Positions 13,704 to 64,000 of a DNA stretch of 64,000 nt are shown here, piece after piece; the first letter of the stretch is position 1, and every line of letters begins with the position of its first letter. Under the pieces are notes generated by a model. That model searched no databases and was not told the DNA's origin. It saw nothing but the letters and a program-made list of their open reading frames with translations. Origin of the DNA: Octopus sinensis. Lineage: Eukaryota. The position numbers were made by a program, and so were the translations under genes. The DNA lies in contig NW_021832537.1 of NCBI RefSeq assembly GCF_006345805.1, forward strand, positions 1 to 64,000. The letters run 5' to 3'.

Positions 13704-13814
13704 TTGGCGTGGCAATAACTGAGTGGCGGGGTTTGCCATTATTAAGAGGAATTCAAAGAAGAACCAAAAAATGACGTGCAATATGCGGGGTGGCATTATA
13801 AGGGGATGACTTTA
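13704..13814 (-). mobile_element. terminal remnant of a pogo-like transposon at the duplication edge
   Basis: Minus strand reads TA+AAGTCATCCCCTTATAATGCCACCCCGC. A related motif lies beside the pogo DDE fragment at 38581-38620, and there is a second copy at 41430-41540. Confidence 0.55.
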
Positions 13815-14011
13815 TAGAGGGTCGTCACCGCCTCAACCCAAAGGCCGTCACGACCCCAACTTATCTACAGAACTGGTTTATTTGAATTTATAATTTCTAA
13901 TCGAAATTTTCATTTCCTTTAATTTACATTTCCTGAAATATAATTACATTGCAAAAATGATTATAAACTTGGCTACATTTCAAAATTTATTTATTTATTT
14001 CAGAAACAAAA

Positions 14012-16779
14012 TTAATAAATTGTTTTTAGTGTTGGCAAAAAAATAATTTTATTCCATTCCACTCTATAGTTTAAAATCCAAAAAATCCAAAAAAATGCTA
14101 ATGAATATATGTTAATAACTTGATAGTATGCAACATCAAATGTATATTTCATTACGAGGGTTGGGTAAATGTTCAAATTGCAACCTTTTTTTATCATTAA
14201 TGAAACTGATGCCGCACACTAAATTAAAATTATCATAAAAAATACATGAATATGTGAAAGGATCGCTAGAATGCAATAATACTTAAACAGCTTTTCATAA
14301 ACTGTTTCATCTACGTTATCCGATGGCGTTATATTGAATGGTAACAAAACACTTTTAAAAATACAAAATGACGACATTTGAATGAAGTTTAAAAGAGCTA
14401 TTAAAATTATAATAGTAAAAATTTAAACCTGCCAGTGTGTAATAATCTCCACGCAATAGGAAAGCCGAGGCGCTCCAATGTATTTCAGTAAGTGAATGGT
14501 TGTTTCCAATCAAATAATGGAACATCATGTTTAGAAAATACCAAAATGATAAATAAAAAAAGTCGTTGTTTAACTCGTGAAAAGTATTGTGAGTAGTACA
14601 ATCCCGAGGTTTGTTGGTTATATGAGAAAAATAAACATATAGTATCAGAAAGTAAATTATAAATGCCAGCAAATGTAATATATTGTTAGAATATATACAC
14701 AAAATTACTATAATAAAAGCAAAAGATTTGTAGTAGGAACTTTTCTCTTGATTGAATAATTTATTTGGTGTGATATAAGAATAAATAAAAACCAAAGCGG
14801 CCGATAATGTTGAAAAATAAAATAAAAATGAAAAGAAACGTTGTCTTATAAAGCTCAGTTGAAGATATTCTTTAAAATAATACAAGTAAGTGGCAAAAAA
14901 AATAATCATGAAACAAACTGAAGATGAAAAAAGAAATTTTAATAGTTTGTTAGATGTCTCTAACGTTATGATAAAGTAATATCCAATTGATAAAAAAATT
15001 AGCATTGTTGTATATACTATAATTGTTTGATTTGTGTTCAATACGGAAAGTTCCCTTGAGAAAAGATTACCATTAACTGACCACGTGGTAAATCGATAAA
15101 AAGCAGCGAAAAGTGTAGAAAATAATATAGTCGTGAGCGAAAACATTAGGAAATACAAATTATTTAAATTTGTATTAAACAAGACGACTAAGATGAGTGA
15201 AATTATAGCCAAACACATTGAGCTAAAAGCGTTAATTTCGACAAAAAATAGGAAAACAAATATTAAACATCCCCATATAATTGATACAATTAAACCGAGA
15301 TTAATTTTGAATTGCTTAATAACGGAAATAGTGAGCAGTACGAATATGCAAATGCTTGATGGAACAAAAAAAGACGAAGGAAGATAAGATTGGAAATAAA
15401 CTAAAATACCGATTAATAGACATCGAAGCGTAGAAGGGACAAATTTGTTATCGGTAATACAAATTATCGGATAAATAAGATATAATGAATAAATAAAGCA
15501 TTGAATTGCTATTTGAGTATCACAAATTCTCCATTTCTTGTAAATTGATTTCTTGGTTTCATTCATAAAACGATAATATAAATTGGATGCTTCTGAATAA
15601 TTTTTTGATAAATATTGAAATTCTGCTTCTTTTATATACTTTGCTATTATTTCTTTTGCCTGCAGAGACTCATAAAATGTCAAAATTTGTAAAGCATTAT
15701 TTCTGATAATATCAATATTCTAAAATATATGTTGATCGTATAAAGACACTACTTTTCCTGGGTTTGTAAGTTCATTAATTACCGAACCAAGATTCTGAAA
15801 AGGGATTGGAACACCAAGTAAAGCTGCCAATGTTGGAGTAAAACTATCCTGCTCAATTTGATTTAATTCAGTCTACGATTATTTAATACATAATAATCTT
15901 ACTGTTGAATAGTGATTTGCAGAAAGATTTTTTTTACTGTAAACAAATAAAGCAGTTTTTTCTTCTCCTTCCCCATCTCCGTGAGATCCATTAGGAACTG
16001 ATCCATGATCGCCAAATACAAATAAAATTGTCTCATTGTCAATAACGGATTTAATTTTGCTACAAATAAATAGAAAAAGTATTATACCCAATAACTTTAT
16101 TATAAAACTGAAGACGGTCTCTTATCGAAGGATGATTTAGACCTACGAGGTGATAAAGGTGGTCCATTCCAAGGAAATGAGCAACATAGACGTCACCTTC
16201 ATTATTTTCGATCATGGTGGGTAAATTGTCGTCAATGAGATTGTCGATAGTATAAATATCATCAAGATCGTTGTCGTTAGTGTGCGTTTTTACAGAGAAA
16301 TGATTATTATACATATTTACAAGAGATACACCTCCGACATAGACAATTTTTTTGTGATTAATATTTAGTTGGTTGAATATGTTATCTTCTACAAAACCGT
16401 AGTCCATCCAACTATGCCAAAATCCTGTAAAAATTGAATACAAACGATTAATAGTCATCGATGGAAACGGAGCCTCAAATGAATATAGACGTGTATTATA
16501 TGGTTCATTTATTTGCATTTTATATAGATTTGTAAGCTGATTAAGATATGTTGCTTCCCTAGAACTGTTTGTTACTACAGAGTCGAGACGTAGTCCATCA
16601 ATTATTATAATCACTGCTTTTGAAAATTTGCCCTTAAGATCCGATTTTTTGCTTATTCCATACAAGTTCCCTCTTCTTTGAGTATTTACAGTCTGGCAGT
16701 GAATTATATTCAGATAGTTTATATAAATAAAGAATGATAGCAATATCCACCTTATTAGAATATTAATAACACTCTCCAT
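14012..16779 (-). CDS. PIGO: GPI ethanolamine-phosphate transferase (PIG-O/PIG-G family), copy 1
   Basis: IIIDGLRLD, HFLGMDH, FGDHG..G.HG and TPTLAALLGVPIPFQNLG, then a long polytopic TM region. Frames are joined by 27-31-nt introns. PIG-O versus PIG-G is not firmly resolved. Confidence 0.82.
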
Positions 16780-17084
16780 TCGAGTTTAAATGGGCATAGC
16801 GGGAAAATTGTATATTTAAACCGCAGTTCACGAACGAGCTTAAAATTCCCTTAAATTTTCCAATTCTCAGATTTGCCAATTTCTAAGAAAATTTTTTTTA
16901 ATTTATTAGAAATTTTCTGATTTCCGAATTTGTCAATGTTTTTTCAAAGTTTTAAAAAAATGACTAAAAATTTGCATTTGAGATCCTTTTAATTTTGACT
17001 TTACATATTTCCGACAAAAGAACAAGTAAACACATTGTTATTTTTTTTGAAATATTTGCTGTTGAGGTTGTTTCCACAATGGGT

Positions 17085-17700
17085 CCTATCAGTTCTAACA
17101 TCGAGGGGAATTCAGCGGCGTTAAGCACGCGCTTCACAACGTCGTTCAATGAAGCGTGCCTGGGGATCCTGCCGGCACTGAGGCGACAAGAGAGAGGGTG
17201 TAAACCTCTCCTGTGACGAGATCGGTAACGCATTCAGCCAATCGCCCGAATGCGGTTGACAGACACAATTAATGCTTGCCAACTGAAACTGATCGGCGTG
17301 TGACCGGATATCTTCAATTATGTGAGAACAATATATGTTGTCCCAGTGCTTTTGAGCCGACGGAATGTTCGGAACTTTAAGCCCCCGAGGAACCCACACG
17401 TTGACACCAGCCGCATATTCCACCAACTCGCACTGTTCAGAAGAGAGAAAAAGAACAGAGTTGACGAAATTAGTAGAAGCGGACAACGATGATAGGTAAC
17501 ACGGAAGGGATAAGTCACGGCAAGAGGAAATACCGATGCCCCCATAACGGATGGGCAAATTAGCACGCACCATATCATCAGATTTGAGTTTTATGTTTAC
17601 CAGTAGCCCAAGGACTTTGGAAACCAGATTATCCAGGCGAGATAAGTATTCTTGTTCTCGGAAGCACGACGTAGAGCGCATGAGAAAAGTAAGTTTCGGA
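17085..17700 (-). mobile_element. CRE-like non-LTR internal fragment
   Basis: [22 protein letters not shown] and [24 protein letters not shown]. Confidence 0.85.
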
Positions 17701-31143: not shown

Positions 31144-33307
31144 TTAATTCATTTGTAAAATTCTGTTCTTTTGATTCCTTGCTTCCTCCCGAATGCATTC
31201 CGGGAGATCGCATCCGAGTACTTGATGGAGAAAATCGATTGTCTCGTTGATATCATCCAAAAGAAAATCCTTATCCAACCTCATCAATTCATTCCAGTCG
31301 ACATCCAATCCAGCAGTGTCAATTGACCCTAACAATGTCTAATAAGTAGATACCCTCCTTGGGGATTATACCCAGCGGACTCTCCGTGCCCAAATCTTTG
31401 CCATCCAGTCTGTCCAAAATCCAGTCGAGAACTCTCGCATTATCGGAGAATCCAGGCCAGAGGAACTTGTTGTTGCCATCAGTTCTGAACCAGTTGACGT
31501 GAAATATTTTGGGCATCAGGATTGAGAAAGAGTATTACTTGGTTAATGCCATTGTCGAGACTGATCCAGTGGTCGAGGTACCGTCCAAAGTTGTACCCCA
31601 TGAATGGTCTCATTGCCATGGGGTCGTGCATTATGGACTTTCCTACAACCATAAGTCCGCGAGGAGACCCTTGAATTCGGCGGCCGACGTGGTTTCTGAC
31701 TTGAGTTGGCAGCCAATAAAGACCCCGTGAGTCCACCCATTTGCTTCGTAGACAAGAGGGATTCCTGAATATCGGAGTACTCAAACCTTTGGGACGACGA
31801 CCACCAAAGATGATGGCCGAAATGGGGACTCCCTCGGGGTCCTCCCACTGAGGGTGGATGATGGGGCATTGGCAGGCAGGGGCAGTGAATCGGGAGTTTG
31901 GGTGTGCAGCTGGAGTGGTAGCCGTGCTTCGAGACCACTCTTTTCCCTTCCAGTCGATCAGCACGTCATCCTAGGAATGACAGACACAAGAACGTCGTTG
32001 ATGGTGTCTTCGAGCCCGGCCCAGTAAGGACACCCCTCTTTGGTCAGTCCCACGTTGGTGAATATCGAGTTCTCCTGCATAGTGGCCATCGCGTTCCTGT
32101 TCGTCTTCCAATTAGTGCCAGGAGCCACGCCAAAAAACCCATTTTCTGGGTTGATTGCCCTCAACTGGCCAGATTTGTCGAATCTCATCCAGGCAATGTC
32201 GTCGCCTAACATTGGAGGGGAGAGCCGACCTACGCAACGAACCTTCCTTTCGGGGAAAATGGACTCCATCATGGCCATGTTCGTCTTGCCACACGCACTC
32301 GGGAATGCCGCAGCAATGAATTTTTCTTGTCCCGATTTATTGGTGATGCCCAAGACCTAGAAAGTAGACCGGCCGACCAACGAGCATGTGTTCGGCCAGC
32401 CATCCCTCCCGCCGCGCAATATAACTCCCGATTCGCAGAGCAAAACACTTTTTGCCCAAAAGAGAGTTGCCGCCATATCCACTTCCGAATGACATTATTT
32501 TGTTTTCGTGAGGGAAATGAAGAATGAGGACTTTATCAGGATTGCAGGCCCAGGCATACTCGGAGTAGTCTAAATGGAGAAACCCCTCAACTTGCTTCGT
32601 TTGTGCGAGGACTGCCCACCGAGTGGATGCACGTCACGAAATTGTCCAGTCTGACCATGTCCCATATCGTGTTGCTTATTCTCGTCATTTTGTGCATGTT
32701 CAGCACCACGTACCCCGAATCCGTCAACTGAATCCCGATTTTGCTGTACTCGCTCCCCAACGGCCCCATCATGAAGGGGATGACGTACATCAGACGACCT
32801 ATTTCCCTCACACACCTCACCTCGCATGCACCCCGGCCACCTCTTCTCGTTTTCCTCGAGGGCCTGTTCAGGGGACATCCACTGCCCCATCTTTGTCGTG
32901 GCGTCCTCACTCCCGTGCGCCACGCTCTCGAACTTGTCGGGCGTGACGATGAAGGTTTTGGACTCGACACGAGCAACGTCCGCAGGGTCAGTTCTCGCCA
33001 GGTAACTGTCGGGTCATTTTATGGCACTTCACCAGTTGTTCCCCTTCATTTTGGTGATTATTCTCCGCTTCAACAGTCTTTGGGTGATTTCCCGTTCCTC
33101 CCGCAAAGACCCGTCGCAAATATAAATTGCCCTCGGACGGAATTTGGTCACCTACAGATGCCACGAGCAGTCAACATTGTCCATTATCAACTTTTTTACT
33201 GACACGGGCAGTCTTGTAAAGTCTCCCTGTTTGATCGGGATGGTGAACTGCTCGCAATAAACGTAGTGGACTTCCTCAAACTGTGGGCCCTCATTATCTT
33301 CCAACAT
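31144..33307 (-). CDS. PCK: phosphoenolpyruvate carboxykinase (GTP)
   Basis: [77 protein letters not shown] and [14 protein letters not shown]. Confidence 0.96.
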
Positions 33308-37750: not shown

Positions 37751-37879
37751 ATCCACTTGGAAAATTGTCTAATGTCTGTTGTGCGTAAACAATATCGTAC
37801 TATAGCACACGAAAATAGGGGATTCAAAAAAGAATAGGAGGAACGTTTTTTATGATTCAAAAGAATGGAAAAGTACATT

Positions 37880-38480
37880 GCTTAATATGTTATGCGACGG
37901 TAAAATCGTTAAAACCTTCTCCGTCAAAGGACATTATAATCTTCACAAATCAATTTATAATATTTATCAAGGCGATTCTATAAAAAAGAGTAGATTTTTT
38001 AAAATCTGAATACGCAAAACGATCATCATCTTTGGATGTGGCGCCACATCCATACTGACGCCGGAATTTTTAAGGAAGTTATTGCAATTTTTGCTAAAGA
38101 ATGTTGTTCTCGAAATACAAAAGATATACTCAAAAAATTAACACTCAGCAATGATCCAGTTGCTAAAAGAATTGAATCTATATCAGATAGTATTCAGCAC
38201 AAGATATTAAGTAAATTTTATCCAATGACTATTTTTAGAGAGGAAAAGTTCGCATACTTTTCATTTGCCATTGAGTGTTCTAAAGATATTACTGACGCAG
38301 AACAATTAATTTTGTCTATAATAGGAGTTTGAAATTTATGAAGAATTTCTTTCCTTATGTTCTTTTCACCATAAAACCAAAGGGATAGATATGTTTTAAG
38401 AAATTTGTCGAGTAATTAAAGATAAAAACTTGAACTCTTCAAGATTCATTTCCGTGGCAACTGACGAAAAAAATGTGATT
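37880..38480 (+). mobile_element. hAT (Buster/Charlie-like) transposase fragment
   Basis: LTLSNDPVAKRIESIS and YFSFAIECSKDITDAEQL resemble the LSNNTVARRI / FSLALDESTDITDTAQL motifs. Confidence 0.7.
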
Positions 38481-39447: not shown

Positions 39448-39990
39448 ATGAACTCCTCCAAGAATCTTCCACCCTACGATGTCCTCGACTTACATGATGA
39501 GGTCCTTAAAACCTTCCCCCAAAAAAAATTAAAAAAAAATTTTCTGCATTTTGGTTAAAATGAACAACTACGATGTCCTCGACATTCATGATGAGGTCCT
39601 TAAAACCTTCCCCCCAAAAAAAATTAAAAAAAAATTTTCTGCATTTTGGTTAAAATGAACAACTACGATGTCCTCGACTTACATGATGAGGTCCTTAAAA
39701 CCTTCCCCCAAAAAAAATTAAAAAAAAATTTTCTGCATTTTGGTTAAAATGAACAACTACAATGTCCTCGACTTACATGATGAGGACCTTAAAACCTTCC
39801 CCTCAAAAAAAAATTAAAAAAAAATTTTCTGCATTTTGGTTAAAATGAACAACTACGATGTCCTCGACTTACATGATGAGGTCCTTGAAACCTTCCCGCC
39901 AAAAAATCAAGAAATTATTTTCTGCATTTGATTAAAATGAACAACGTTAATGTCCTCGACATTCATGATGAGGTCCATTAAAACCTTCGA
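39448..39990 (+). repeat. ~95-bp tandem repeat, about 5.5-6 units
   Basis: ATGAACAAC recurs at 39560, 39655, 39749, 39845 and 39937 (periods 95, 94, 96, 92). The variation lies mainly in homopolymers. Confidence 0.93.
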
Positions 39991-40974
39991 GGCAAAAATC
40001 TCACGTATTAAGAATATCCTTGATGAAAATGACAGCGAGAATATTAACAATGATGAACTCCCAATTATTCGCGATAAAGAAATTCAATTCATCCTATGAT
40101 TTTCTCTTTAAAATTAAATGCATATATCATTATCGATCATGAATCAAAATTAAAGCTATTATCATATTTGACTTTGACAGAATGTGCAATTACAGATTGC
40201 ACGACCTTGAATAGAGTGTGCAATTAACAGATTTTGAAAAACACTTTGATAGTTGAAACCACATTAGCACAATCATTAACACAATTTACCACCAATTGAC
40301 AGCGCAATCAGAAGAATTTGCGTAAAAATATTAACTATTTAGTTAAGTTTTTCGTAAAGATAGAATTTATTTTCGGTATGCCTCTTTTCCTAAACTTTTT
40401 TAAAAAATAATTTTTTCAATCCGAGGTGCAGCCACGACACTTAATTAGCTGATTTAATTATTCTTAATATTTTTTAAATTTCAGTTAAACTATTTTTTCA
40501 ATAGATAACCGAAGGAGGGAAGACGACCTTAAGAAAAGAAGTTTTTCGTAAAGATAGAATTTATTTTCTGTATCCTCTTTTTTCCTAATATTTTTTATTA
40601 TTCAAAAATAATTTTTTAAATAGATAACCGAAGGAGGAAAAACGAAGCTGAAGAAAAAACGGTCAGCTTAAGGTAATTAAATCTTTTTTGTGTGTCGCTT
40701 TTTTGGCTGCTGCTACTCTGCCTGCCGCATCTCCGCCAGTGGTTTGTCTAATCAAGGTCACTAAGCTAAATCTCCGGACTATAAAGGCTCTTAAGCATTA
40801 TCTTAACTGGCTGTTAAAAAAATTAGACAGGTTGTTGCCGTGGCGGCAGAGATTTTTTTTGTTTATACTTTTTTAACAAATTTTTAAAGTTTTTTTTTGT
40901 TTTTTCATTTCTTTTGTTTTTAAATTATTTATTTTTATTTGTTTTTTTTTATTTTTTTTGTTATTTTCTACAAA

Positions 40975-41430
40975 TTCAACCGGATTGAATTTTTAAACTC
41001 CTTAGATCCCTCTGGAATGCCGAATCATCTTTTAAAGTTAAAGATAGACGTTCCAGTGGTTTTATTACGAAATTTTGCGCCACCTAAATTATGCAACGGA
41101 ACGAGGTTAGTTATCAAAAATTTGATGGCTAACGTAATAGAGGCGACGATATTAACAGGTAAGTATAGAGGTGAGGATGTTTATATTCCACGAATTCCGA
41201 TAATTTCTGATGAATTACCATTTAGATTTAAAAGGCTGCAATTTCCTTTGAGGATGAGTTTTGCAATGACAATAAACAAGGCCCAGGGACAGTCATTAAA
41301 GATAGTTGGGTTATTTTTAGAGAGTGAGTGCTTTTCACATGGACAGCTGTATGTGGGATGCTCGAGGGTAGGCAGAAGAGAAAATTTATTCATATATGCC
41401 AAGGAAGGACGGACGACAAACATCGTTTAT
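40975..41430 (+). mobile_element. Helitron PIF1-like helicase C-terminal fragment
   Basis: EFLNSL..PNHLLKLK..LLRN..LCNGTRL..IPRIP..QFPLRMSFAMTINKAQGQSL..FSHGQLYVGCSRV..TNIVY. Truncated at the duplication junction. Confidence 0.88.
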
Positions 41431-41739
41431 TGGCGTGGCAATAACTGAGTGGCGGGGTTTGGCATTATTAAGAGGAATTCAAAGAAGAACCAAAAATGAC
41501 GTGGCAATATGCGGGGTGGCATTATAAGGGGATGACTTTATAGAGGGGTTTAAGTGTATTAGACATTGTGCAATAGAGGGTCGTCACGACCCTAACCTAT
41601 CTACAGAACTGGTTGATTTGAATTTATAATTTCTAATCGAAATTTTCATTTCCTTTAATTTAGAAATATAATTACATTGCAAAAATGATTATAAACTTGG
41701 CTACATTTCAAAATTTATTTGTTTATTTCAGAAAAATAA

Positions 41740-44506
41740 TTAATAAATTGTTTTTAGTGTTGGCAAAAAAATAATTTTATTCCATTCCACTCTATAGTTT
41801 AAAATCCAAAAAATCCAAAAAAATGCTAATGAAAATATGTTAATAACTTGATAGTATGCAACATCAAATGTATATTTCATTACGAGGGTTGGGTAAATGT
41901 TCAAATTGCAACCTTTTTTTATCATTAATGAAACTGATGCCGCACACTAAATTAAAATTATCATAAAAAATACATGAATATGTGAAAGGATCGCTAGAAT
42001 GCAATAATACTTAAACAGCTTTTCATAAACTGTTTCATCTACGTTATCCGATGGCGTTATATTGAATGGAAGCAAAACACTTTTAAAAATACAAAATGAC
42101 GACATTTGAATGAAGTTTAAAAGAACTATTAAAATTATAATACTACAAATTTAAACCTGCCAGTGTGTAATAATCTCCACGCAATAGGAAAGCCGAGGCG
42201 CTCCAATGTATTTCAGTAAGTGAATGGTTGTTTCCAATCAAATAATGGAACATCAAGTTTAGGAAATACCAAAATGATAAATAAAAAAAGTCGTTGTTTA
42301 ACTCGTGAAAAGTATTGTGAGTAGTACAATCCCGAGGTTTGTTGGTTATATGAGAAAAATAAACATATAGTATCAGAAAGTAAATTATAAATGCCAGCAT
42401 ATGTAATATATTGTTAGAATATATACACAAAATTACTATAATAAAAGCAATAGATTTGTAGTGGGAACTTTTCTCTTGATTGAATAATTTATTTGGTGTG
42501 ATATAAGAATAAATAAAAACCAAAGCGGCCAATAATGTTGAAAAATAAAATAAAAATGAAAAGAAACGTTGTCTGATAAAGCTCAGTTGAAGATATTCTT
42601 TAAAATAATACAAGTAAGTGGTAAAAAAAATAATCATGAAACAAACTGAAGATGAAAAAAAAAATTTTAATAGTTTGCTAGATGTCTCTAACGTTATGAT
42701 AAAGTAATATCCAATTGATAAAAAAATTAGCATTGTTGTATATACTATAATTGTTTGATTTGTGTTCAATACGGAAAGTTCCCTTGAGAAAAGATTACCA
42801 TTAACTGACCACGTGGTAAATCGATAACAAGCAGCGAAAAGTATAGAAAATAATATAGTCGTGAGCAAAAGCATTAGGAAATACAAATTATTTAAATTTG
42901 TATTAAACAAGACGACTAAGATGAGTGAAATTATAGCCAAACACATTGAGCTAAAAGCGTTAATTTCGACAAAAAATAGGAAAAAAAATATTAAACATCC
43001 CCATATAATTGCTACAATTAAACCAAGATTAATTTTGAATTGCTTAATAACGGAAATAGTGAGCAGTACAAATATGCAAATGCTTGATGGAACAAAAAAA
43101 GACGAAGGAAGATAAGATTGGAAATAAACTAAAATACCGATTAATAGACATCGAAGCGTAGAAGGGACAAATTTGTTATCGGTAATACAAATTATCGGAT
43201 AAATAAGATATAATGAATAAATAAAGCATTGAATTGTTATTTGAGTATCACAAATTCTCCATTTCTTGTAAATTGATTTCTTGGTTTCATTCATAAAACG
43301 ATAATATAAATTGGATGCTTCTGAATAATTTTTTGATAAATATTGAAATTCTGCTTCTTTTATATACTTTGATATTATTTCTTTTGCCTGGAGAGACTCA
43401 TAAAATGTCAAAATTTGTAAAGCATTATTTCTGATAATATCAATATTCTAAAATATATGTTGATCGTATAAAGACAATACTTTTCCTGGGTTTGTAAGTT
43501 CATTAATTACCGAACCAAGATTCTGAAAAGGGATTGGAACACCAAGTAAAGCTGCCAATGTTGGAGTAAAACTATCCTGCTCAATTTGATTTAATTCAGT
43601 CTACGATTATTTAATACATAATAATCTTACTGTTGAATAGTGATTTGCAGAAAGATTTTTTTTACTGTAAACAAATAAAGCAGTTTTTTCTTCTCCTTCC
43701 CCATCTCCGTGAGATCCATTAGGAACTGATCCATGATCGCCAAATACAAATAAAATTGTCTCATTGTCAATGACGGATTTAATTTTGCTAAAATAAATAG
43801 AAAAAGTATTATACCCAATAAATTTATTATAAAACTGAAGACGGTCTCTTATCGAAGGATGATTTAGACCTACGAGGTGATAAAGATGGTCCATTCCAAG
43901 GAAATGAGCAACATAGATGTCACCTTCATTATTTTCTACCATGGTTGGTAAATTATCGTCAATGAGATTGTCGATAGTATAAATATCGTCAAGATCGTTG
44001 TCGTTAGTGTGCGTTTTTGCAGAGAAATGATTATTATACATATTTACAAGAGATACACCACCGACATAGACAATTTTTTTGTGATTAATATTTAGTTGGT
44101 TGAATATGTTATCTTCTACAAAACCGTAGTCCATCCAACTATGCCAGAATCCTGTAAAAATTGAATACAAACGATTAATAGTCATCGATGGAAACGGAGC
44201 CTCAAATGAATATAGACGTGTATTATATGGTTCATTTATTTGCATTTTATATAGATTTGTAAGCTGATTAAGATATGTTGCTTCCCTAGAACTGTTTGTT
44301 ACTACAGAGTCGAGACGTAGTCCATCAATTATTATAATCACTGCTTTTGAAAATTTGCCCTTAAGATCCGATTTTTTGCTTATTCCATACAAGTTCCCTC
44401 TTCTTTGAGTATTTACAGTCTGGCAGTGAATTATATTCAGATAGTTTATATAAATAAAGAATGATAGCAATATCCACCTTATTAGTATATTAATAACACT
44501 CTCCAT
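41740..44506 (-). CDS. PIGO: GPI ethanolamine-phosphate transferase (PIG-O/PIG-G family), copy 2
   Basis: Same exon structure as copy 1, no visible inactivating lesion, about 20 amino-acid differences in the ORF track. Confidence 0.82.
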
Positions 44507-44779
44507 TCGAGTTTAAATGGGTATAGCGGGAAAATTGTATATTTAAACCGCAGTTCACGAACGAGCTTGAAATTTTGCGGTTCGAAAATTTCTCATTTCC
44601 ATTCTGAATCTTTAAGAAGATTATTGGATTTCAATTTATTATGATTAAACTTATGCTTTCTGAATATCGGATGCCATAAAAATTACCTGTAAAATTTGTT
44701 TCATAATTCTGCAGGACATAATTAAAATTATTCCGGCTCTGGAGAAAGTCGGCCTTAGTTTAAATTTCTCTAAATGTGA

Positions 44780-45230
44780 AATCTCTAACTTCGGGTGCTC
44801 GCAATCTACCTTCCAAGATGCCGTTTTCTCATTCCGTGATCTTATCCCGGGAGTGCAATCTATTCATATTGACGAACTTTCTATCCTGGGAGCCCCGGTG
44901 GCTGGCAATTCTATTGATATGGCCCTACGCAAAAAGGAGTTCTTTCTCGAGGCAGTTTTTGAACGTATCAAACAGTTGGACTCACACACAGCATTATTCC
45001 TTTTACGAAATTGCTTTCTTATTTGCTACGCTCTTCTCTGTGTTTTGCTTTTCCAGAGAGATTTTCCGCCATTGACCACCTTATCTGTACTTGTACTCAA
45101 AACATATGCAATTCCCCCTTTGACGATAGGGATTGGAGACAGGCAACCCTCCTCGGGAGGTGGAATAGCTTTTTCAGCGGTTCTCGATCGCCGTTATCTT
45201 AGGGAACAGTTTGGTCCTCCTTTCGAATAA
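44780..45230 (+). mobile_element. CRE-like non-LTR internal fragment
   Basis: LSILGAPVAG..LKQLDSHTALFLLRNCF and DRDWRQATL. Confidence 0.75.
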
Positions 45231-52860: not shown

Positions 52861-54845
52861 CAGCGGTTCTCAACCTTTTTTAGACTGGGGACCACTTTTG
52901 CACTATAAAATTTTGTGGGGACCACCTTAAATAAAATAAACATTTTTTGGTATTAGCGCACAATTTTTGGCCTCGTCAGGGCCAGGTTTAGACATGTTCG
53001 AATATTTATTATAAAAATAACATGAACATTATGAAAATAACAGAAAATTTAATAGTAATTTAGTGAGATTTCTGATCTTGTTTGCTCAGAATAATTTTAC
53101 TTATATCAGGCTCTATGTTCGACAAAGCTACTCGCATATCATCTTGTACCCGTAGTCTATTTCTATATTTTGTTTTTAGAAAAGTCAGACACGACATCGC
53201 CATTTCACAGTGATAAGTAGTGGGGAATGCAAGTATTGATTCCAATGCAGTTTTACTCAAAATGGGGAATTCTTTCGCCATCTGACACCTAACAATAAAA
53301 AGTAATTATTAATGAGAATACCACCTTGTGGAGTGGGTCGAGTGTATCCCAAAGGAAGGCTGCCATCCTTGCTGCTGAAAAAGCGCGTGGTACACACCTA
53401 GGGACCATAAAAGGCTATGTGTCGGCTAAGTATGGTCTAGGTGCTACCCAAGTTAATGTGAAGGAGTTGATCAAACTTCAAAAGGAGTCTTTAATTAAAA
53501 AGATCAACTTAAAAGTCCTTCACAAGACTCTCTTTAGCAGCCTGGACAACCCGCACATTGACGTATCGTCGTCATCTACGTGGCTGAAATAGGAATAACT
53601 CTCCCCGATCAGAAGGGTTGTTCTCATATTTGCAGGATAGAAACTTTTTTAATGGTCAACGGAAACAGTGTAACCACTGTAAGGCAATGACCGTTGACCA
53701 TTTAGCCACGAAGTGCGGGAGTATGCTTACCATGATTACACATGGAGGCATAACGAGGTGGTGAGGTCCCTCCATCTTTTGCTCTGCAATAAGTACGGCT
53801 TGAGGCGGTCCAGAAAGTTGCGAACCCATCGTTCAATCGGTGTGTGAGAACTCGCGGGTGTGCATTAAGGTGGATACCCCCATACGCACCTCGATTGTTG
53901 TCCAGCACAACAGACCCGACATTGTGGTCCACGATAAGGTCACCGGGGAGATTGTTATCGTGGAGGTGGGCATCACGTGCCTAGACCGTTTGCAGATAGT
54001 GGAAGTGGAGAAAAGGAGGAAGTATGACCTCCTTGCAAACGAGCTAGGACTGATGCACCAGTGCAAAGTCCATGTCATCCCGTGTGTGATGACATGGGAT
54101 GGACTGGTCACCAATACCACAAGCGGTACTTAAGACAGTTGGATGTAGATAAGTCTCTACAGGCTTATATACAGTCAACTGTTCTTAAGAGGACTCTGGA
54201 GAGTGTCTCGTTTGATGCTCGCCGATCCAGCCCTTTCCTGACGTTTAGTCAGCAAGAGGCGCTGGACTGCACCTTCTCGAAGGTCTACAGTGCCAGAGAA
54301 GAGGAGGAAGAAGGGGAGGAGGTGCGTGGAGTGCCGCCTTCTGCTCACTTCGAAGGCTCTGGACTTAGTTAGTAAAATTACTTAGTTAATTAGTTTCTTT
54401 CTTAATAAATAGTAAGTCTGAAAAAAAAAAATGAGAATACCAAAAATCTAATAATGAAGTACATTTGAAAATAATCTGACCAGACTGATTACATTGAAGT
54501 TCAATCAAGCTCTGCTGAAAATTGAGTTCCTGATATTCTTTAAATGAGGTCAAGAAAGGTTGAACGATCCAGTTTGGAATTGGGTCTTCAACAGGAAAAT
54601 AATCATCAAATTTTGTCTTGAGATTTTCCAGATGTTTGATTATCAGACTTAGAAGAACATTATCCGGTGGGTTGGGGACCACTAAAAATTTTCTGGGGAC
54701 CACGATTGAGAACCGCTTGATTAATTTCAATGTTTTTGATTTATCCTTAATTGTACAATTAGTTTTAACTTTAATATATTTTTATTTTTCGAAAATTCCT
54801 GGGGACCACTAAAAATTTTCTGGGGACCACGGTTGAGAACCGCTG
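52861..54845 (-). mobile_element. internally deleted hAT (Buster-like) transposon
   Basis: TIR CAGCGGTTCTCAACC at 52861 and its complement ending at 54845. The 8-bp TSD is TACTAAAG/TACTAAAC with central TA. C-terminal transposase FDDYFP..WIVQPF..LLDFW|CQMAKEFPILSKTAL..FPTTYHCE..KTKYRNRL. Confidence 0.9.
53324..54430 (+). mobile_element. 5'-truncated R4/Dong-like non-LTR retrotransposon nested in the hAT
   Basis: CNHCKAMTVDHLATKC, HNRPDIVVHDK..VEVGIT..EKRRKYDLL. Poly(A) at 54421-54430. The 13-bp TSD AATGAGAATACCA lies at 53311-53323 and 54430-54442. Confidence 0.92.
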
Positions 54846-58226: not shown

Positions 58227-59372
58227 CAAATCTTGCTGAAAATTTTATAACGCAAGAATAGAGTAGATAAAAAGGTTTTAGACGAGCTGTAAAAAGCGCA
58301 TATTATCGAGAAATATTTAAAACTGATCCCCTGAAAAAACGAGCTCGATTGATAGCACACACGTGGAGAACTGAGTATGGATTGTAATAATTACGCAAAT
58401 CTTGTTGAAAATTTTAAAACGCAAGAATAGAGTAGATAAAAAGGTTTTAGACGAGCTGTAAAAAGCGCATATTATTGAAAATATTTCAAACTGATCCCCT
58501 AAAAAAACGAGCTCGATTGATATCACACACGTGGAGAACTGAGTATGGATCTTTATAATTACGCAAATCTTGTCGAAAATTTTAAAACGCAAGAATAGAG
58601 TAGATAAAAAGGTTTTAGACGAGCTGTAAAAAGCGCTTATTATCGAGAAATATTTAAAAATGATCCCCTGAAAAAACGAGCTCGATTGATATAACACACG
58701 TGGAGAACTGAGTAAGGATCTTTATAATTACGCAAATCTTGCTGAAAATTTTAAAACGCAAGAATAGAGTAGATAAAAAGGTTTTAGACGAGCTGTAAAA
58801 AGCGCATATTATCCTAAAATATTTCAAACTGATCCCCTGAAAAAATGAGCTCGATTGTTATCACACACGTGGAGAACTGAGTAGGGATCTTTATAATTAC
58901 GCAAATCTTGCTGAAAATTTTAAAACGCCAGAATAGAGTAGATAAAAAGGTTTTAGACGAGCTGTAAAAAGCGCATATTATCCTAAAATATTTCAAACTG
59001 ATCCCCTGAAAAAATGAGCTCAATTGTTATCACACACGTGGAGAACTGAGTAGGGATCTTTATAATTACGCAAATCTTGCTGAAAATTTTAAAACGCCAG
59101 AATAGAGTAGATAAAAAGGTTTTAGACGAGCTGTAAAAAGCGCATATTATCGAGAAATATTTCAAACTGATCCCCTGAAAAAATGAGCTCGATTGTTATC
59201 ACACACGTAGAGAACTGAGTAGGGATCTTTATAATTACGCAAATCTTGCTGAAAATTTTAAAACGCCAGAATAGAGTTAGATCAAAAGGTTTTGACAGCT
59301 GTAAAAAGCGCATATTATCCAGAAATATTTCAAACTGATCCCCTGAAAAAATGAGCTCAATTGTTTTATCAC
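58227..59372. repeat. 169-bp satellite, left block (~7 units)
   Basis: The G of CACGT recurs at 58363, 58531, 58700, 58869, 59038 and 59207 (period 168-169). Confidence 0.97.
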
Positions 59373-61213
59373 TAGGGCAACCAAAAAATTGCACTTTTTA
59401 ATAAAAAAATTGCAAAAATGATTTTAAAAATTGTAAAAAATTGCAAAAAAATTTTTTTTAATTGTAAACATTACATTATGCAAAAAATTAACGAAATTAT
59501 TTATTGTAATAGGAAATCAAATATTCCTGAACATTTTCAGGTTTAAAGTTCCTCTCTTTACTAAGAATTTTCGTCAAAAGAGATATTGCCCTTTCGATAG
59601 ATGCTGAACTTGCGCTACATTTTCTGAGATGTGAATAAACTTCTGGCGATAGATTCTTATTTGAGAATTCAAGAATACTTAGTATTCCTGATTTCTCAAG
59701 CTTTTTTGATATATAGGATTTTATGTCGCATGGATCTGATGTAAAGTCTAGGGTGTTTAGATCACCATAAGCTGTTGCAATGGAGTAATCAAGCAATTCA
59801 GTATTTGAAATCATTTCAATTAATCCCAAATAATTTGAACTGATTTGGGTTAAGCTTGGAAACAACGTAGGATTATTCACTGATTTTTTGCCTAAAATAA
59901 TTAAAAACTAAAACATTTTGTATTAAAACTCCATCTCCTTCAAATTCAGATACGATTTTAATAATTTCTGGAAGATTCTGGGAGTAATATTTTGCTGCTT
60001 TTAGCCAGCTTCCCCATCTTGTAACCACAACTTCGGGTGGATTTCCGATTCGTGAAAACATCTCCAAACGTCTCTTGTTTTTGACTGTGGCAGCCTTTAT
60101 AGACGAAATCAATTCATCAACATCTGCGAAGTATGCCTTAATCTTTAGAGCACAGTTGTGCAATAAATGTGACACGCAAGTCACGTGGAAAAGATTTTGG
60201 TATATCAATTTCATTGATGCCCCAGCTAAAATTAAATTTATTTATATATACCACTGGTCATATATCTCGCCCCATCTGTAACGAATAATATAAAATTTTC
60301 ACGTTCAATAGAAAATTTCTTTATTACTTTGTCCACCTCAACACAAATTGTTGAAGTAGTAGGCGGATATATAGATTGGTACACGATACTAAATGAAGAT
60401 TTTTTGGAGTGGAGATTTTCCCAATCAAAGTAATTAAAAAACGAGTTCCATTGATTTGGGCTTCATCACAAACAAAAAAAAACACATTCCCCACTATTGA
60501 ATAACTTAAAAAAAACAACAGTAAATGAGTCTGAATGGTATTAATTTTATATTTTGATATTTCTTTAACATTTAACCTGCAAGATGATTCAGATGGCAAA
60601 GGATATGTTTCCTGCTCAAAAAGCCGTATGAGGGAAGGATGTCTGATTTTATAAATTGGTATGTTTGCCTCCAAAACGCTTGTGTTACTTTGATCCCCCA
60701 ATCCTTTCGAGTATCCGTTATCGCCGAAAGAAATGTTTGTGAACTCTGAGATGAATTTGTCCATTCTATAAATTTAAATTCAAAGAAATACTGTGTGCTT
60801 TTAAATGTTTTTTTGAAGAACGGTGCGCATCAAACAAAAATTTTGTGTCACACCGTACAACAGTTGAGCAATTGGAGCAAAATAAATTCCCTTCACTGTC
60901 AATAACAAACTCGGGGAATTTCTTTGCATAAAATGAAATTTTCTGTGACACTGTCCTTTTACCCATTACAACAAACAACTAAAACACGTTTTAATAATCT
61001 TTTACTTATAATTATATTATTTTTTAATAAAAAAATTTTTTTTTTAATTTAAAAAATTGCAAAAAATTGTAAAATGACTACAAAAATTGCAAAAAATTGC
61101 AAATTTAAATCGAATAAAAATATAATTAAAATTAATGTCTATTCATTACTTTATTATTTATCGAATTTTAATTAATTATATTTAATTGCAAAAAATTGCA
61201 ATTGGTTGCCCTA
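59373..61213 (-). mobile_element. hAT-superfamily transposon (DUF659-like transposase) inserted in the satellite
   Basis: 12-bp TIR TAGGGCAACCAA. TTATCAC is duplicated at 59366-59372 and 61214-61220. Subterminal AAAAAATTGC repeats. Transposase: CSNC..H..SKKH zinc finger, VCDE, VTDGARYM, CVSHLLHNC, TRWGSWL, ASSASIER. Confidence 0.9.
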
Positions 61214-64000
61214 TTATCACACACGTGGAGAACTGAGTAGGATCTTTATAATTACGCAAATCTTGCTGAAAATTTTAAAACGCCAGAATAGAGTAGATAA
61301 AAAGGTTTTAGACGAGGTGTAAAAGCGCATATTATCCTAAAATATTTCAAACTGATCCCCTGAAAAAATGAGCTCGATTGTTATCACACGCGTGGAGAAA
61401 TGAGTAGGAATCTTTATAATTACGCAAATCTTGCTGAAAATTTTAAAACGCCAGAATAGAGTAGATAAAAAGGTTTTAGACGAGCTGTAAAAAGCGCATA
61501 TTATCGAGAAATATTTCAAACTGATGCCCTGAAAAAATGAGCTCGATTGTTATCACACGCGTGAAGAACTGAGTAGGGATCTTTATAATTACGCAAATGT
61601 TGCTGAAAATTTTAAAACGCCAGAATAGAGTAGATAAAAAGGTTTTAGACGAGCTGTAAAAAGCGCATATTATCCAGAAATATTTCAAACTGATCCCCTG
61701 AAAAAATGAGCTCAATTGTTATCACACACGTGGAGAACTGAGTAGGATCTTTATAATTACGCAAATGTTGCTGAAAATTTTAAAACGCCAGAATAGAGTA
61801 GATAAAAAGGTTTTAGACGAGCTGTAAAAAGCGCATATTATCGAGAAATATTTCAAACTGATGCCCTGAAAAAATGAGCTCGATTGTTATCACACACGTG
61901 GAGAACTGAGTAGGGATCTTTATAATTACGCAAATCTTGCTGAAAATTTTAAAACGCCAGAATAGAGTAGATAAAAAGGTTTTAGACGAGCTGTAAAAAG
62001 CGCATATTATCGAGAAATATTTCAAACTGATGACCTGAAAAAATGAGCTCGATTGTTATCACACGCGTGAAGAACTGAGTAGGGATCTTTATAATTACGC
62101 AAATGTTGCTGAAAAATTTAAAACGCCAGAATAGAGTAGACAAAAAAGGTTTTAGACGAGCTGTAAAAAGCGCATATTATCAAGAAATATTTCAAACTGA
62201 TCCCCTGAAAAAATGAGCTCGATTGATATCACACACGTGGAGAACTGAGTAGGGATCTTTATAATTACGTAAATCTTGCTGAACAAATTTAAAAGCCAGA
62301 ATAGAGATAGATAAAAAGGTTTTAACGAGCTGTATAACGCATATTATCGAAAATATTTCAAACTGATCCCCTGAAAAAATGAGCTCGATTGTTATCACAC
62401 GCGTGGAGAACTGAGTAGGGATCTTTATAATTACGCAAATCTTGCTGAAAAATTTAAAACGCCAGAATAGAGTAGATAAAAAGGTTTTAGACGAGCTGTA
62501 AAAACGCATATTATCGAGAAATATTTCAAACTGATGACCTGAAAAAATGAGCTCGATTGTTATCACACGCGTGAAGAACTGAGTAGGGATCTTTTAATTA
62601 CGCAAATGTTGCTGAAAATTTAAAACGCCAGAATAGAGTAGACAAAAAAGGTTTTAGACGAGCTGTAAAAAGCGCATATTATCAAGAAATATTCAAACTG
62701 ATCCCCTGAAAATGAGTCTCGATTGTTATACACACGCGGGAGAACTGAGTAGGGATCTTTATAATTACGCAAATCTTGCTGAAAAATTTAAAACGCAAGA
62801 ATAGAGTAGATAAAAAGTTTTAGACGAGGTGTAAAAGCGCATATTATCCTAAAATATTTCAAACTGATCCCCTGAAAAAATGAGCTCGATTGTTATCACA
62901 CGCGTGGAGATGATTAGGAATCTTTATAATTACGCAAATCTTGCTGAAAATTTTAAAACGCCAGAATAGAGTAGATAAAAAGGTTTTAGACGAGCTGAAA
63001 AGCGCATATTATCAAGAAATATTTCAAACTGATCCCCGAAAAAATGAGCTCGATTGATATCACACACGTGGAGAACTGAGTAGGGATCTTATAATTACGC
63101 AAATCTTGCTGAAAAATTAAAACGCCAGAATAGAGTAGATAAAAGGTTGTAGACGAGCTGTAAAAAGCGCATATTATCGAGAAATATTTCAAACTGATGC
63201 CCTGAAAAAATGAGCTCGATTGTTATCACACGCGTGAAGAACTGAGTAGGGATCTTTATAATTACGCAAATGTTGCTGAAAAATTTAAAACGCCAGAATA
63301 GAGTAGATAAAAAGGTTTTAGACGAGCTGTAAAAAGCGCATATTATCAAGAAATATTTCAAACTGATCCCCTGAAAAAATGAGCTCGATTGATATCACAC
63401 ACGTGGAGAACTGAGTAGGGATCTTTATAATTACGTAAATCTTGCTGAAAAATTTAAAACGCCAGAATAGAGTAGATAAAAAGGTTTTAGACGAGCTGTA
63501 TAAAGCGCATATTATCCAGAAATATTTCAAACAGATCCCCTGAAAAAATGAGCTCGATTGATATCACACACGTGGAGAACTGAGTAGGGATCTTTATAAT
63601 TACGCAAATCTTGCTGAAAAATTTAAAACGCCAGAATAGAGTAGATAAAAAGGTTTTAGACGAGCTGTAAAAAGCGCATATTATCGAGAAAATTTCAAAC
63701 TGATCCCCTGAAAAAATGAGCTCGATTGTTATCACACGCGTGGAGAACTGAGTAGGGATCTTTATAATTACGCAAATCTTGCTGAAAAATTTAAAACGCA
63801 AGAATAGAGTAGATAAAAAGGTTTTAGACGAGGTGTAAAAGCGCATATTATCCTAAAATATTTCAAACTGATCCCCAGAAAAAATGAGCTCGATTGTTAT
63901 CACACGCGTGGAGAAATGAGTAGGAATCTTTATAATTACGCAAATCTTGCTGAAAAATTTAAAACGCCAGAATAGAGTAGATAAAAAGGTCTTAGACGAG
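61214..64000. repeat. 169-bp satellite, right block (~16.5 units, runs off window)
   Basis: Same monomer, continuing in register after the hAT insertion. Confidence 0.97.

What the first reader, a model, noticed from the sequence alone, without database searches (positions are those of the whole stretch)
59373..61213. hAT transposase gene interrupted by four host-style ultrashort introns
The four broken ORFs join through GT-AG introns at 60766-60791 (26 nt), 60494-60519 (26), 60226-60251 (26) and 59892-59914 (23). Splicing gives sensible junctions (KAH-KWTNSSQSSQTFL; IQTHLL-GECVFFVCDE; VTDGARYMTS-AGASMKL; LIQN-AKKSVNN). Four introns in a ~1.5-kb transposase, at the host modal size, implies intron gain or shrinkage inside a mobile gene. 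With the unrelated Buster element, it hints at an ongoing process that puts tiny introns into transposons, possibly gating transposase production by splicing. Most remaining frameshifts fall in homopolymers and may be read errors.
Basis: partly seen in the sequence, partly recalled or inferred. Interest (0 to 1): 0.75.

Follow-up and report, generated by a model that had tools for sequence, protein, structure and literature searches.

The report
Dead hAT transposon with four micro-introns
A 1.8-kb hAT "jumping gene" sitting in satellite DNA has its transposase gene split by four 23-26-base introns of the same tiny size as the host animal's own introns and absent from all sampled relatives. This copy is also broken by four frameshifts, so it is a tidy but fairly ordinary case of a mobile gene carrying host-type introns.

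Summary
Window 59373-61213 (minus strand) is one complete hAT-superfamily DNA transposon. It has 12-bp TIRs (TAGGGCAACCAA) and a flanking GTGATAA repeat, and it sits inside a 169-bp satellite array.

Its transposase gene is interrupted by four GT..AG segments of 26, 26, 26 and 23 nt at the stated coordinates. Removing them restores gap-free colinearity with a large family of about 455-aa transposases. Twenty host introns mapped in three host genes of the same window are 22-30 nt (median 25), so "host-style" is correct.

None of 81 related loci examined at DNA level (23-55% identity) has an intron-sized insertion at any of the four positions. One distant relative has a longer intron-like insertion about 6 codons from position 1. 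The introns are therefore specific to this element's lineage.

- The four remaining 1-nt frameshifts are unlikely to be read errors. About 8.6 kb of host coding sequence in the window has at most one anomaly, so this copy is probably dead.
- Nothing shows an ongoing intron-inserting process or splicing-gated expression.
- Intron-bearing hAT genes are long known (Ac, Tol2).

Verdict: a new member of a known kind, of moderate to low interest.

The parts
59373..61213 (-). Complete hAT-superfamily DNA transposon copy, 1,841 bp
   Evidence: Perfect 12-bp TIRs at both ends. It is the only copy in the window. It interrupts a 169-bp satellite array.
61202..61213 (-). 5' terminal inverted repeat, TAGGGCAACCAA
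   Evidence: A 43%-identical relative in L001 has TIRs that start with the same TAGGGC.
59373..59384 (-). 3' terminal inverted repeat, TTGGTTGCCCTA
61214..61220 (-). Flanking direct repeat GTGATAA, upstream copy (probable target-site duplication)
   Evidence: The satellite consensus at this point is GTGTGTGATAACAAT. Seven bp are identical, and the 8th base differs in every register.
59366..59372 (-). Flanking direct repeat GTGATAA, downstream copy
61041..61103 (.). 5' subterminal repeat block (TTGCAATTTTTTGCAA-type motifs), inverted relative to 59395-59450
   Evidence: blastn of the element against the window, 83-86% identity. Inferred to be transposase-binding sites, as in other hATs.
59395..59450 (.). 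3' subterminal repeat block
60792..60966 (-). Exon 1 (ATG at 60966-60964); encodes the N-terminal C-x2-C...H-x5-H zinc finger
   Evidence: hmm 6-62. The family gives weak zf-U1-like hits.
60766..60791 (-). Intron 1: 26 nt, GT..AG, phase 1, 15% GC
   Evidence: It is the only GT..AG option that joins the two frames. If retained, translation stops after 8 codons (KAHSISLNLNL*).
60520..60765 (-). Exon 2; contains frameshift 1 at the T4 run 60673-60676
60494..60519 (-). Intron 2: 26 nt (alternative donor gives 23 nt), GT..AG, phase 2, 19% GC
   Evidence: The unspliced sequence happens to be open in frame because of the T9 frameshift just downstream.
60252..60493 (-). Exon 3; contains frameshift 2 (T9 run 60474-60482) and frameshift 3 (TA repeat 60367-60373). 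Includes the invariant D-E of the first catalytic motif and TDGARYM.
60226..60251 (-). Intron 3: 26 nt (alternative 29 nt), GT..AG, phase 1, 8% GC
   Evidence: The junction RYMTS|AG matches the consensus RYMxSAG with no gap.
59915..60225 (-). Exon 4 (CxxH and TRWGSW motifs), intact
   Evidence: hmm 220-325, 173 bits.
59892..59914 (-). Intron 4: 23 nt (alternative 17 nt), GT..AG, phase 0, 13% GC
   Evidence: The junction LIQN|AK matches the consensus xRAK with no gap.
59497..59891 (-). Exon 5; frameshift 4 at the A6 run 59884-59889, stop TAA at 59499-59497, hAT C-terminal motif SASIERAIS
   Evidence: (hmm 322-457).
58227..64000 (.). 169-bp satellite array (at least 23 monomers) that the element is inserted into; runs to the window end
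   Evidence: Tandem Repeats Finder; sequence.

Best explanation
The locus is one copy of a cut-and-paste hAT-superfamily transposon of the DUF659 type with TAGGGC termini. It inserted into a 169-bp satellite.

Its transposase gene has five exons separated by four spliceosomal micro-introns of 26, 26, 26 and 23 nt with GT-AG ends. These are recognised by the same machinery that removes the host's own 22-30-nt introns. The introns arose in the lineage of this element after it split from all sampled intronless relatives. The most likely route is insertion of new AT-rich sequence, because no coding residues are missing at the junctions.

In a functional master copy, all four introns had to be spliced out to make the roughly 455-aa transposase. 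Retention of intron 1 would stop translation after the zinc finger, and retention of intron 3 or 4 would also truncate the protein (inferred).

The copy in this window has since picked up four 1-nt frameshifts. It can no longer encode transposase, and it could move only if an intact copy elsewhere supplies the enzyme.

Shown: element anatomy, colinearity after intron removal, host intron size, and absence of the introns in relatives. Inferred: actual splicing, gain rather than retention, and death of this copy.
For: - Anatomy: TIRs, flanking repeat and satellite context.
- Family: 35 homologues at 38-45% identity. There are 1,034 cluster representatives at E<1e-30. DUF659 hits 20 of 21 and Dimer_Tnp_hAT hits 6 of 21 weakly. 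The AF2 model of relative P0001 (pLDDT 84.6) matches Hermes transposase at E=1.5e-8 over about 490 columns. Relative L001 has TAGGGC TIRs, an 8-bp TSD and a single 491-aa ORF.
- Introns: GT..AG ends and 23-26 nt. The segments have 8-19% GC against 34.6% in the exons. The junctions are gap-free and the profile tiles contiguously.
- Host introns: PEPCK 24, 27, 22, 22, 25, 24, 23, 22, 26, 25 nt. Pyruvate kinase 27, 23, 27, 25, 25, 26 nt. MDH 27, 25, 26, 30 nt, two of them as AT-rich as the element's introns.
- Published context: introns under 30 bp are known in animals only from myxobolid Myxozoa and Dicyema (PMC13644364).
- Lineage specificity: in 81 related loci read at DNA level, J1 is spanned in 51, J2 in 51, J3 in 62 and J4 in 65. 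Every break has -67 to +1 extra nt, which means frameshifts or deletions and not introns.
- Dead copy: four frameshifts against intact host ORFs.
Against: - There are no RNA data, so splicing is not shown.
- Only one copy is available, so it is unknown whether the introns are fixed in the family or whether an intact copy exists.
- The spliced reading frame still needs four corrections. One of them (T9) lies 12 nt from intron 2, and the unspliced sequence there is open in frame, so intron 2 is the least secure of the four.
- The nearest relative is only 55% identical, so intron-bearing intermediates may be unsampled.
- One distant relative (L069, 23% identity) has a stop-containing GT..AG insertion of about 159 nt roughly 6 codons from the J1 equivalent. 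An old intron near the zinc-finger boundary therefore cannot be excluded for J1.
- The flanking repeat is 7 bp rather than a clean 8 bp.
Confidence: 0.75

Rival explanations
1. The introns are old. The ancestor of this element already had introns at these positions, in some other host and at ordinary length. They merely shrank to about 25 nt under the host's genome-wide pressure, and the intronless relatives lost theirs.
For: Host introns in this lineage are thought to have shrunk as a whole (PMC13644364, PMC6736024). One distant relative, L069, carries a longer intron-like insertion close to J1. The closest sampled relative is only 55% identical.
Against: No relative shows an insertion at J2, J3 or J4 (51, 62 and 65 loci span them), and none shows one at exactly J1 (51 loci). 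These relatives are 23-55% identical and were read at DNA level, so ORF calling did not bias the sample. Many independent losses would be needed.
Confidence: 0.15
2. This copy is actually intact and active. The four residual frameshifts are long-read homopolymer errors.
For: Three of the four sites are homopolymers (T4, T9, A6), and three of the four are apparent 1-nt deletions, which is the usual long-read error type. The element lies in a satellite where polishing reads map poorly. After correction the ORF has no stop codons.
Against: Host AT-rich ORFs of 0.7-1.3 kb stay open across 19-21 homopolymers of 6-10 nt. PEPCK, PK and MDH, about 4.4 kb of coding sequence, need no frameshift correction apart from one odd junction. 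The two copies of a 3.1-kb duplication differ by 65 substitutions but only 5 indels. At the host rate, about 0.16 events are expected in 1.37 kb, against 4 seen. One site is a T4 run and one is not a homopolymer.
Confidence: 0.2
3. The four segments are not introns. They are random insertions in a decaying pseudogene, or DNA-level insertions such as footprints or tiny mobile 'introner'-like units, that happen to have GT and AG at their ends.
For: The copy is decaying: it also carries four other indels. No RNA evidence is available.
Against: All four have GT..AG ends, host-range length and low GC, and they sit exactly where removal restores residue-level colinearity. By chance this is about 1e-7. 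The other indels in the copy are all 1 nt. The segments have no similar copies elsewhere in the window and no terminal repeats or duplicated flanks (sequence).
Confidence: 0.05

Closest known systems
Ac/Ds of maize and Tol2 of medaka: hAT elements whose transposase genes contain introns (four and three respectively; my own knowledge, not checked with the tools)
   Same: Same superfamily and the same layout: TIRs, subterminal repeats, and one transposase gene split by several spliceosomal introns of the size usual for the host.
   Different: Here the introns are 23-26 nt, an order of magnitude shorter. The element belongs to a different, DUF659-type family with a U1-C-like zinc finger, and the other sampled members of that family are intronless. 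Whether intron positions match those of Ac or Tol2 was not compared.
Drosophila P element: transposase production gated by tissue-specific splicing of its third intron, with the unspliced mRNA giving a repressor (my own knowledge)
   Same: It is a DNA transposon whose enzyme can only be made after intron removal. Here retention of intron 1 would yield a zinc-finger-only peptide, formally similar to a truncated repressor.
   Different: The superfamily is different. There is no evidence here for regulated or inefficient splicing, and this copy is broken anyway.
Ultra-short host introns of myxobolid Myxozoa and Dicyema japonicum (PMC13644364; PMC6736024)
   Same: Same size class (published medians 22-27 bp). 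The splice signals are similarly reduced to GT(a/t)...AG, which is what is seen in 20 host introns of this window and in the four element introns.
   Different: Those papers describe host genes. In the text I read, neither reports such introns inside a transposon gene. Which of the two lineages the window comes from was not established.
Hermes transposase (PDB 8edg, 4d1q, 2bw3)
   Same: Best structural match of the family's predicted fold (E 1.5e-8, probability 1.0, about 490 aligned columns).
   Different: Only 11-14% sequence identity, with no hit by sequence profile. The Hermes gene is intronless (my own knowledge).
Introner elements: mobile sequences that create many similar introns, e.g. 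in Micromonas and some fungi (my own knowledge)
   Same: They are a mechanism that inserts new introns into coding sequence.
   Different: The four introns are unlike each other. They have no other copies in 64 kb and no TIRs or TSDs of their own.
CGGBP-type hAT transposases and their domesticated derivatives (PMC8097297)
   Same: N-terminal zinc finger followed by a hAT DNA-binding and catalytic region. The N-terminal pattern looked similar to me from memory.
   Different: Not tested here. This element is a bona fide transposon with TIRs, not a domesticated gene.

Membership tests
hAT superfamily DNA transposon | Short terminal inverted repeats, often starting (C/T)AG | tested here: met
   12-bp perfect TIRs, TAGGGCAACCAA. 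The relative in L001 has TAGGGCGATTTTT.
hAT superfamily DNA transposon | 8-bp target-site duplication | tested here: inconclusive
   A 7-bp identical repeat GTGATAA flanks the element, but no register gives 8 of 8. The relative in L001 has a clean 8-bp TSD, ATGATAAT.
hAT superfamily DNA transposon | RNase-H-like DDE catalytic domain with a large alpha-helical insertion, as in Hermes | tested here: met
   For the 43%-identical relative P0001, Foldseek gives the top 12 hits to Hermes, E down to 1.5e-8. In the window protein the family-invariant D151/E152, D216, E427, C240/H243 and W294 are present. Residue-by-residue equivalence to the Hermes DDE was not checked.
hAT superfamily DNA transposon | C-terminal hAT dimerisation domain (Pfam PF05699) | tested here: inconclusive
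   Only sub-threshold hits, in 6 of 21 homologues (best E 0.0017), and none for the window protein itself. The motif S-x-ER-x-xS is present.
hAT superfamily DNA transposon | DUF659 (PF04937) domain typical of one hAT subgroup | tested here: met
   20 of 21 homologues hit it, best E 1.2e-9. The window protein gives E 3.6e-7 at 30.4 bits, below the 34.7-bit curated cut-off.
Spliceosomal (U2-type) intron | GT at the 5' end and AG at the 3' end | tested here: met
   All four segments.
Spliceosomal (U2-type) intron | Length within the range the host spliceosome handles | tested here: met
   23-26 nt, against 22-30 nt in 20 host introns of PEPCK, PK and MDH.
Spliceosomal (U2-type) intron | Removal restores a continuous reading frame and colinearity with intronless homologues | tested here: met
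   Colinearity is restored at all four junctions. The frame is continuous only after four further 1-nt corrections elsewhere in the gene.
Spliceosomal (U2-type) intron | Absent from mature mRNA | not testable with these tools
   No transcript data for this organism are available. The window's genome is not in the protein or contig collections: best hits are 45-55% identity for the transposase and 72% for PEPCK.
Spliceosomal (U2-type) intron | Branch-point adenosine upstream of the AG | tested here: inconclusive
   A-rich stretches lie 5-13 nt upstream of each AG, as described for host micro-introns (PMC13644364). In 8-19% GC sequence this is uninformative.
Introner-type mobile intron | Many near-identical copies of the intron sequence | tested here: not met
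   No match longer than 14 nt to any of the four segments elsewhere in the 64-kb window, and they are unlike each other. The whole genome was not available.
Buster subgroup of hAT | Sequence similarity to Buster-type transposases | not tested
   The element under study belongs to a DUF659-type family. The separate 'Buster' fragments elsewhere in the window gave only a weak Dimer_Tnp_hAT hit (E 0.034) and no homologues.

The most novel reading that the evidence does not exclude
All four introns were created de novo inside a mobile-element gene while it lived in a micro-intron animal lineage (a myxobolid or dicyemid-like parasite). If so, about 25-nt introns are still being born in a genome otherwise known only for intron shrinkage. 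The copies of this transposon family would then be a datable natural series for how minimal introns arise and what minimal signals suffice. Carrying introns might also be selected in the element, for example to be expressed or to escape surveillance of intronless transcripts such as HUSH in vertebrates, cited in PMC10901741.
Probability: 0.3. Interest if true: 0.6.

Novelty: new member of a known kind. Interest (0 to 1): 0.35.

Why it matters
Intron-bearing DNA transposons are textbook material, and any intron in this host has to be tiny. The basic finding is therefore expected rather than surprising.

Its value is as a clean marker. The element's relatives are uniformly intronless at these sites, so the four introns are lineage-specific events in a gene whose copies can be ordered by age. 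With the whole genome and RNA data, this family could show three things:
- whether micro-introns are still being gained in one of the only two animal lineages known to have introns under 30 nt;
- how little sequence is needed to define them;
- whether retaining them truncates the transposase in a regulated way.

It is also a practical warning for annotation. In such genomes, ORF-based transposon detection will split genes like this one into fragments.

Tried and rejected
- A naive dynamic-programming gene model, allowing any GT..AG of 15-60 nt and maximising ORF length, read through wrong frames in PEPCK and was dropped. I replaced it with three-frame queries against PDB homologues plus an enumerator of frame-compatible GT..AG pairs.
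- The homologue search with a PEPCK exon returned only 100-190-aa fragments. It was useless for exon mapping and for naming the host.
- The last homologue search, with the Buster-like fragments, found nothing at E<=1e-5. Only a candidate 23-nt GT..AG segment was seen.
- A sequence-profile search of the PDB did not find Hermes, only weak U1-C zinc-finger hits. The fold search did find it.
- I suspected that truncated homologue ORFs starting near J1 or J2 were exons of intron-bearing relatives. Their contigs show frameshifts, in-frame stops or internal Met starts instead.
- A search for copies of the intron sequences, and for direct repeats or duplications at intron borders as a clue to mechanism, found nothing.
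- Rfam and tRNA scans of the window were empty.
- Host identity was not settled. The introns point to a myxobolid or a dicyemid (PMC13644364). The window's roughly 39% GC and LINE-rich content resemble the published Dicyema figures of 36.7% GC and 49% repeats (PMC6736024) more than Henneguya at 29% GC. This is only a lead.
Full report
**1. What is at the locus**

Window 59373-61213, read on the minus strand, is a single compact element of 1,841 bp. It starts TAGGGCAACCAA and ends with the exact reverse complement. It has subterminal blocks of TTGCAATTTTTTGCAA-like motifs that are inverted copies of each other. The same 7-bp sequence, GTGATAA, flanks it on both sides.

The element interrupts a 169-bp satellite array that runs from 58227 to the end of the window. 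Joining the flanks reproduces the satellite monomer, apart from two extra A's. No other copy or fragment of the element, and no other TAGGGCAAC terminus, occurs in the 64 kb.

**2. The gene and the four segments**

From the ATG at 60966 to the TAA at 59497 the coding strand is broken into several ORFs. Each starts with GT and ends with AG, and they are 26, 26, 26 and 23 nt long. Their GC content is 8-19%, against 34.6% for the exons.

Removing them and translating gives a protein that aligns along its full length to 35 database proteins of about 455-490 aa at 38-45% identity. At junctions 3 and 4 the alignment is gap-free to the residue: RYMTS|AG against consensus RYMxSAG, and LIQN|AK against xRAK. 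Junction 2 fits within one residue. Junction 1 lies in a variable linker, but it is the only GT..AG pair that joins the zinc-finger frame to the frame containing the conserved QTFL and VTxAF motifs.

A profile HMM of 21 homologues tiles the raw, unspliced frames contiguously: hmm 6-62, 56-90, 86-182, 184-222, 220-325 and 322-457. It aligns the spliced protein as one domain of 556 bits.

Alternative splice choices exist at three junctions (23 nt at J2, 29 nt at J3, 17 nt at J4). By my estimate from the element's base composition, four insertions all carrying GT..AG ends by chance has a probability of about 1e-7.

**3. The host's own introns**

I mapped three conserved host genes of the same window against solved structures and listed every frame-compatible GT..AG pair at each exon break.
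- PEPCK (about 31144-33307, minus strand) has introns of 24, 27, 22, 22, 25, 24, 23, 22, 26 and 25 nt.
- Pyruvate kinase has introns of 27, 23, 27, 25, 25 and 26 nt.
- Malate dehydrogenase has introns of 27, 25, 26 and 30 nt.

That makes 20 introns spanning 22-30 nt, with a median of 25. Most start GTT or GTA, and 13 of 20 end in TAG. Two of the MDH introns are as AT-rich as the element's introns. The element's introns start GTA, GTT, GTA and GTT, all end in TAG, and fall inside this class.

A 2026 paper reports that introns under 30 bp are known in animals only from myxobolid myxozoans (medians 22-27 bp) and Dicyema japonicum, with splice signals reduced to GTa...AG (PMC13644364). The window therefore comes from such an animal. 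I could not tell which one.

**4. What family the element belongs to**

The family is large: 1,034 cluster representatives at E<1e-30 and 8,087 at E<1e-3. Members hit Pfam DUF659 (20 of 21), hit the hAT dimerisation domain weakly (6 of 21), and hit a U1-C-like zinc finger at the N-terminus (2 of 21).

The predicted structure of P0001, a 43%-identical relative, has mean pLDDT 84.6. Its best matches are the Hermes transposase structures (E 1.5e-8, probability 1.0). The element that encodes P0001 has TIRs beginning with the same TAGGGC, a clean 8-bp target-site duplication (ATGATAAT), and a single uninterrupted 491-aa ORF.

The window protein keeps the family-invariant acidic residues D151/E152, D216 and E427, as well as the CxxH and RW motifs. 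I file the element as a hAT-superfamily transposon. The 8-bp TSD criterion is only inconclusively met in this copy, where the repeat is 7 bp.

**5. Whether the introns are ancestral**

Proteins in the database come from ORF calling, which favours intronless genes, so I also looked at DNA.

Eight contigs carrying full or truncated homologues are colinear across all four positions. Their truncations are due to frameshifts, in-frame stops, a LINE insertion or internal Met starts.

A pattern-based scan of metagenome contigs, confirmed by tblastn, then gave 73 more loci at 23-55% identity. Over all 81 loci, position J1 is spanned by a continuous alignment in 51, J2 in 51, J3 in 62 and J4 in 65. The 13 breaks near a junction carry between -67 and +1 extra nucleotides, which means frameshifts or deletions and never an intron-sized insertion. 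The closest relative, L053 at 55% identity, spans J1-J3 without insertion.

The one exception is L069, at 23% identity. It has a stop-containing GT..AG insertion of about 159 nt some six codons upstream of the J1 equivalent. An intron at the zinc-finger boundary may therefore have arisen more than once, or it may be old.

No coding residues are missing at the junctions, so the introns are added sequence and not intronised exon. Gain in this element's lineage is the most economical reading. It cannot be dated, because no relative above 55% identity is available.

**6. State of this copy**

After splicing, four single-base frameshifts remain:
- a T4 run at 60673-60676 that should be T5;
- a T9 run at 60474-60482 that should be T8;
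- a missing base in a TA repeat at 60367-60373;
- an A6 run at 59884-59889 that should be A7.

No alternative splice site removes the need for any of them. The rest of the window argues against that:
- AT-rich host ORFs of 0.7-1.3 kb stay open across 19-21 homopolymers of 6-10 nt.
- The three mapped host genes need no frame correction, apart from one odd PEPCK junction.
- The two copies of a 3.1-kb duplication differ by 65 substitutions but only 5 indels.

At the host rate of at most one anomaly in about 8.6 kb, 0.16 events are expected in 1.37 kb, whereas four are seen. I conclude, at about 75-80% confidence, that this copy is a recently decayed pseudogene. After correction it has no stop codons, which fits recent decay.

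**7. How it most likely works**

In an intact master copy, the primary transcript must lose all four micro-introns to encode the transposase. The transposase would then bind the subterminal repeats and TIRs and cut and paste the element, as other hATs do. This step is inferred from family membership.

Unspliced RNA would be translated only as far as a 66-74-aa zinc-finger peptide, because intron 1 brings a stop after eight codons. Retention of intron 3 or 4 also truncates the protein.

That makes splicing a possible control point, as in the P element. Nothing here shows that it is used. The copy in the window can at best be moved in trans.

**8. Comparison and novelty**

hAT genes with introns are classical: Ac has four and Tol2 has three (my own knowledge). 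Splicing-gated transposase is classical too (the P element). Micro-introns in these host lineages are published (PMC13644364, PMC6736024).

What appears to be unreported, in the papers I could search, is such micro-introns inside a transposon gene, in a family whose other sampled members are intronless. I rate it a new member of a known kind, with interest 0.35.

The most novel reading still open is de novo birth of about 25-nt introns inside a mobile gene in a lineage known only for intron shrinkage. I give it probability of about 0.3, and it would be worth roughly 0.6.

**9. Limits**

- There are no transcripts and no whole genome, and only one copy is available.
- The host was not identified.
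- Intron 2 is the least secure, because the unspliced sequence is open in frame once the neighbouring T9 is taken as assembled.

Noticed in passing
window 31514-31538 (minus strand), inside the host PEPCK gene: One PEPCK exon junction (…DNGINQ | PKIFHVNWF) has no frame-compatible GT..AG pair. The 25-nt piece to be removed is GTAATACTCTTTCTCAATCCTGATG, which starts with GT but ends with TG. It is either a non-canonical acceptor, a base error or polymorphism, or a 1-nt frameshift with no intron.
   Followed up: partly
window 13704-16847 and 41430-44574: A 3.15-kb segmental duplication at 97.4% identity (65 mismatches, 5 indels). It carries an AT-rich gene with long open ORFs, one of which hits the type I phosphodiesterase / nucleotide pyrophosphatase family and looks like a GPI ethanolamine-phosphate transferase. 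The ORFs differ in length between the two copies.
   Followed up: partly
window 58227-59372 and 61214-64000: A 169-bp satellite, at least 23 monomers at 93-95% identity with a 337-bp higher-order signal. It runs off the window end and is the target of the hAT insertion.
   Followed up: partly
window 53060-54730 (minus strand): A C-terminal fragment of another hAT-like (Buster-like by eye) transposase, with only a weak Dimer_Tnp_hAT hit (E 0.034). It is split by a nested insertion of about 1.1 kb (53282-54385) that carries retroelement-like ORFs on the plus strand. Directly after ...LLDFW there is a 23-nt GT..AG segment (54418-54440, GTATTCTCATTTTTTTTTTTCAG) that could be another micro-intron. 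This could not be verified because no homologues were found.
   Followed up: partly
window 37806-38329 (plus strand): ORF pieces in three frames that look like the N-terminal part (zinc finger, then 'LSNDPVAKRI...FSFAIECSKDITDAEQL') of a Buster-type hAT transposase. They give no Pfam hit and are followed by 94-bp-period tandem repeats at 39474-39998.
   Followed up: no
window 40924-41445 (plus strand): An isolated C-terminal Pif1-type helicase ORF (Pif1_2B domain, E 1e-15), as found at the end of Helitron Rep/Hel proteins. There is no upstream helicase or Rep part.
   Followed up: no
window 11272-13606 (plus strand), 17121-17681 (minus strand), 44853-45230 (plus strand): LINE-like reverse-transcriptase ORFs and fragments (RVT_1, E 1e-6). 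They appear to lack micro-introns over about 2.3 kb, as expected for elements that copy through RNA.
   Followed up: no
alignment A2 / relatives of the element (not in the window): The N-terminal zinc finger of this hAT family gives weak but repeated matches to the U1-C / matrin-type zinc finger: PDB U1-C at E 0.004-0.008, and Pfam zf-U1 at E 7e-5 in 2 of 21 members.
   Followed up: no
L069:625-865 (metagenome contig OGCC01001411.1): A distant relative (23% identity) has a stop-containing GT..AG insertion of about 159 nt right after its zinc finger, about 6 codons from the position of intron 1 in the window element. It is the only intron-like interruption seen in the 81 related loci.
   Followed up: partly
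whole window: Strong compositional mosaic. Blocks with conserved host genes (about 22-36 kb: SMC hinge protein, PEPCK and others) are 45-53% GC, while repeat- and transposon-rich blocks are 28-33% GC. Intron GC follows the local GC.
   Followed up: no
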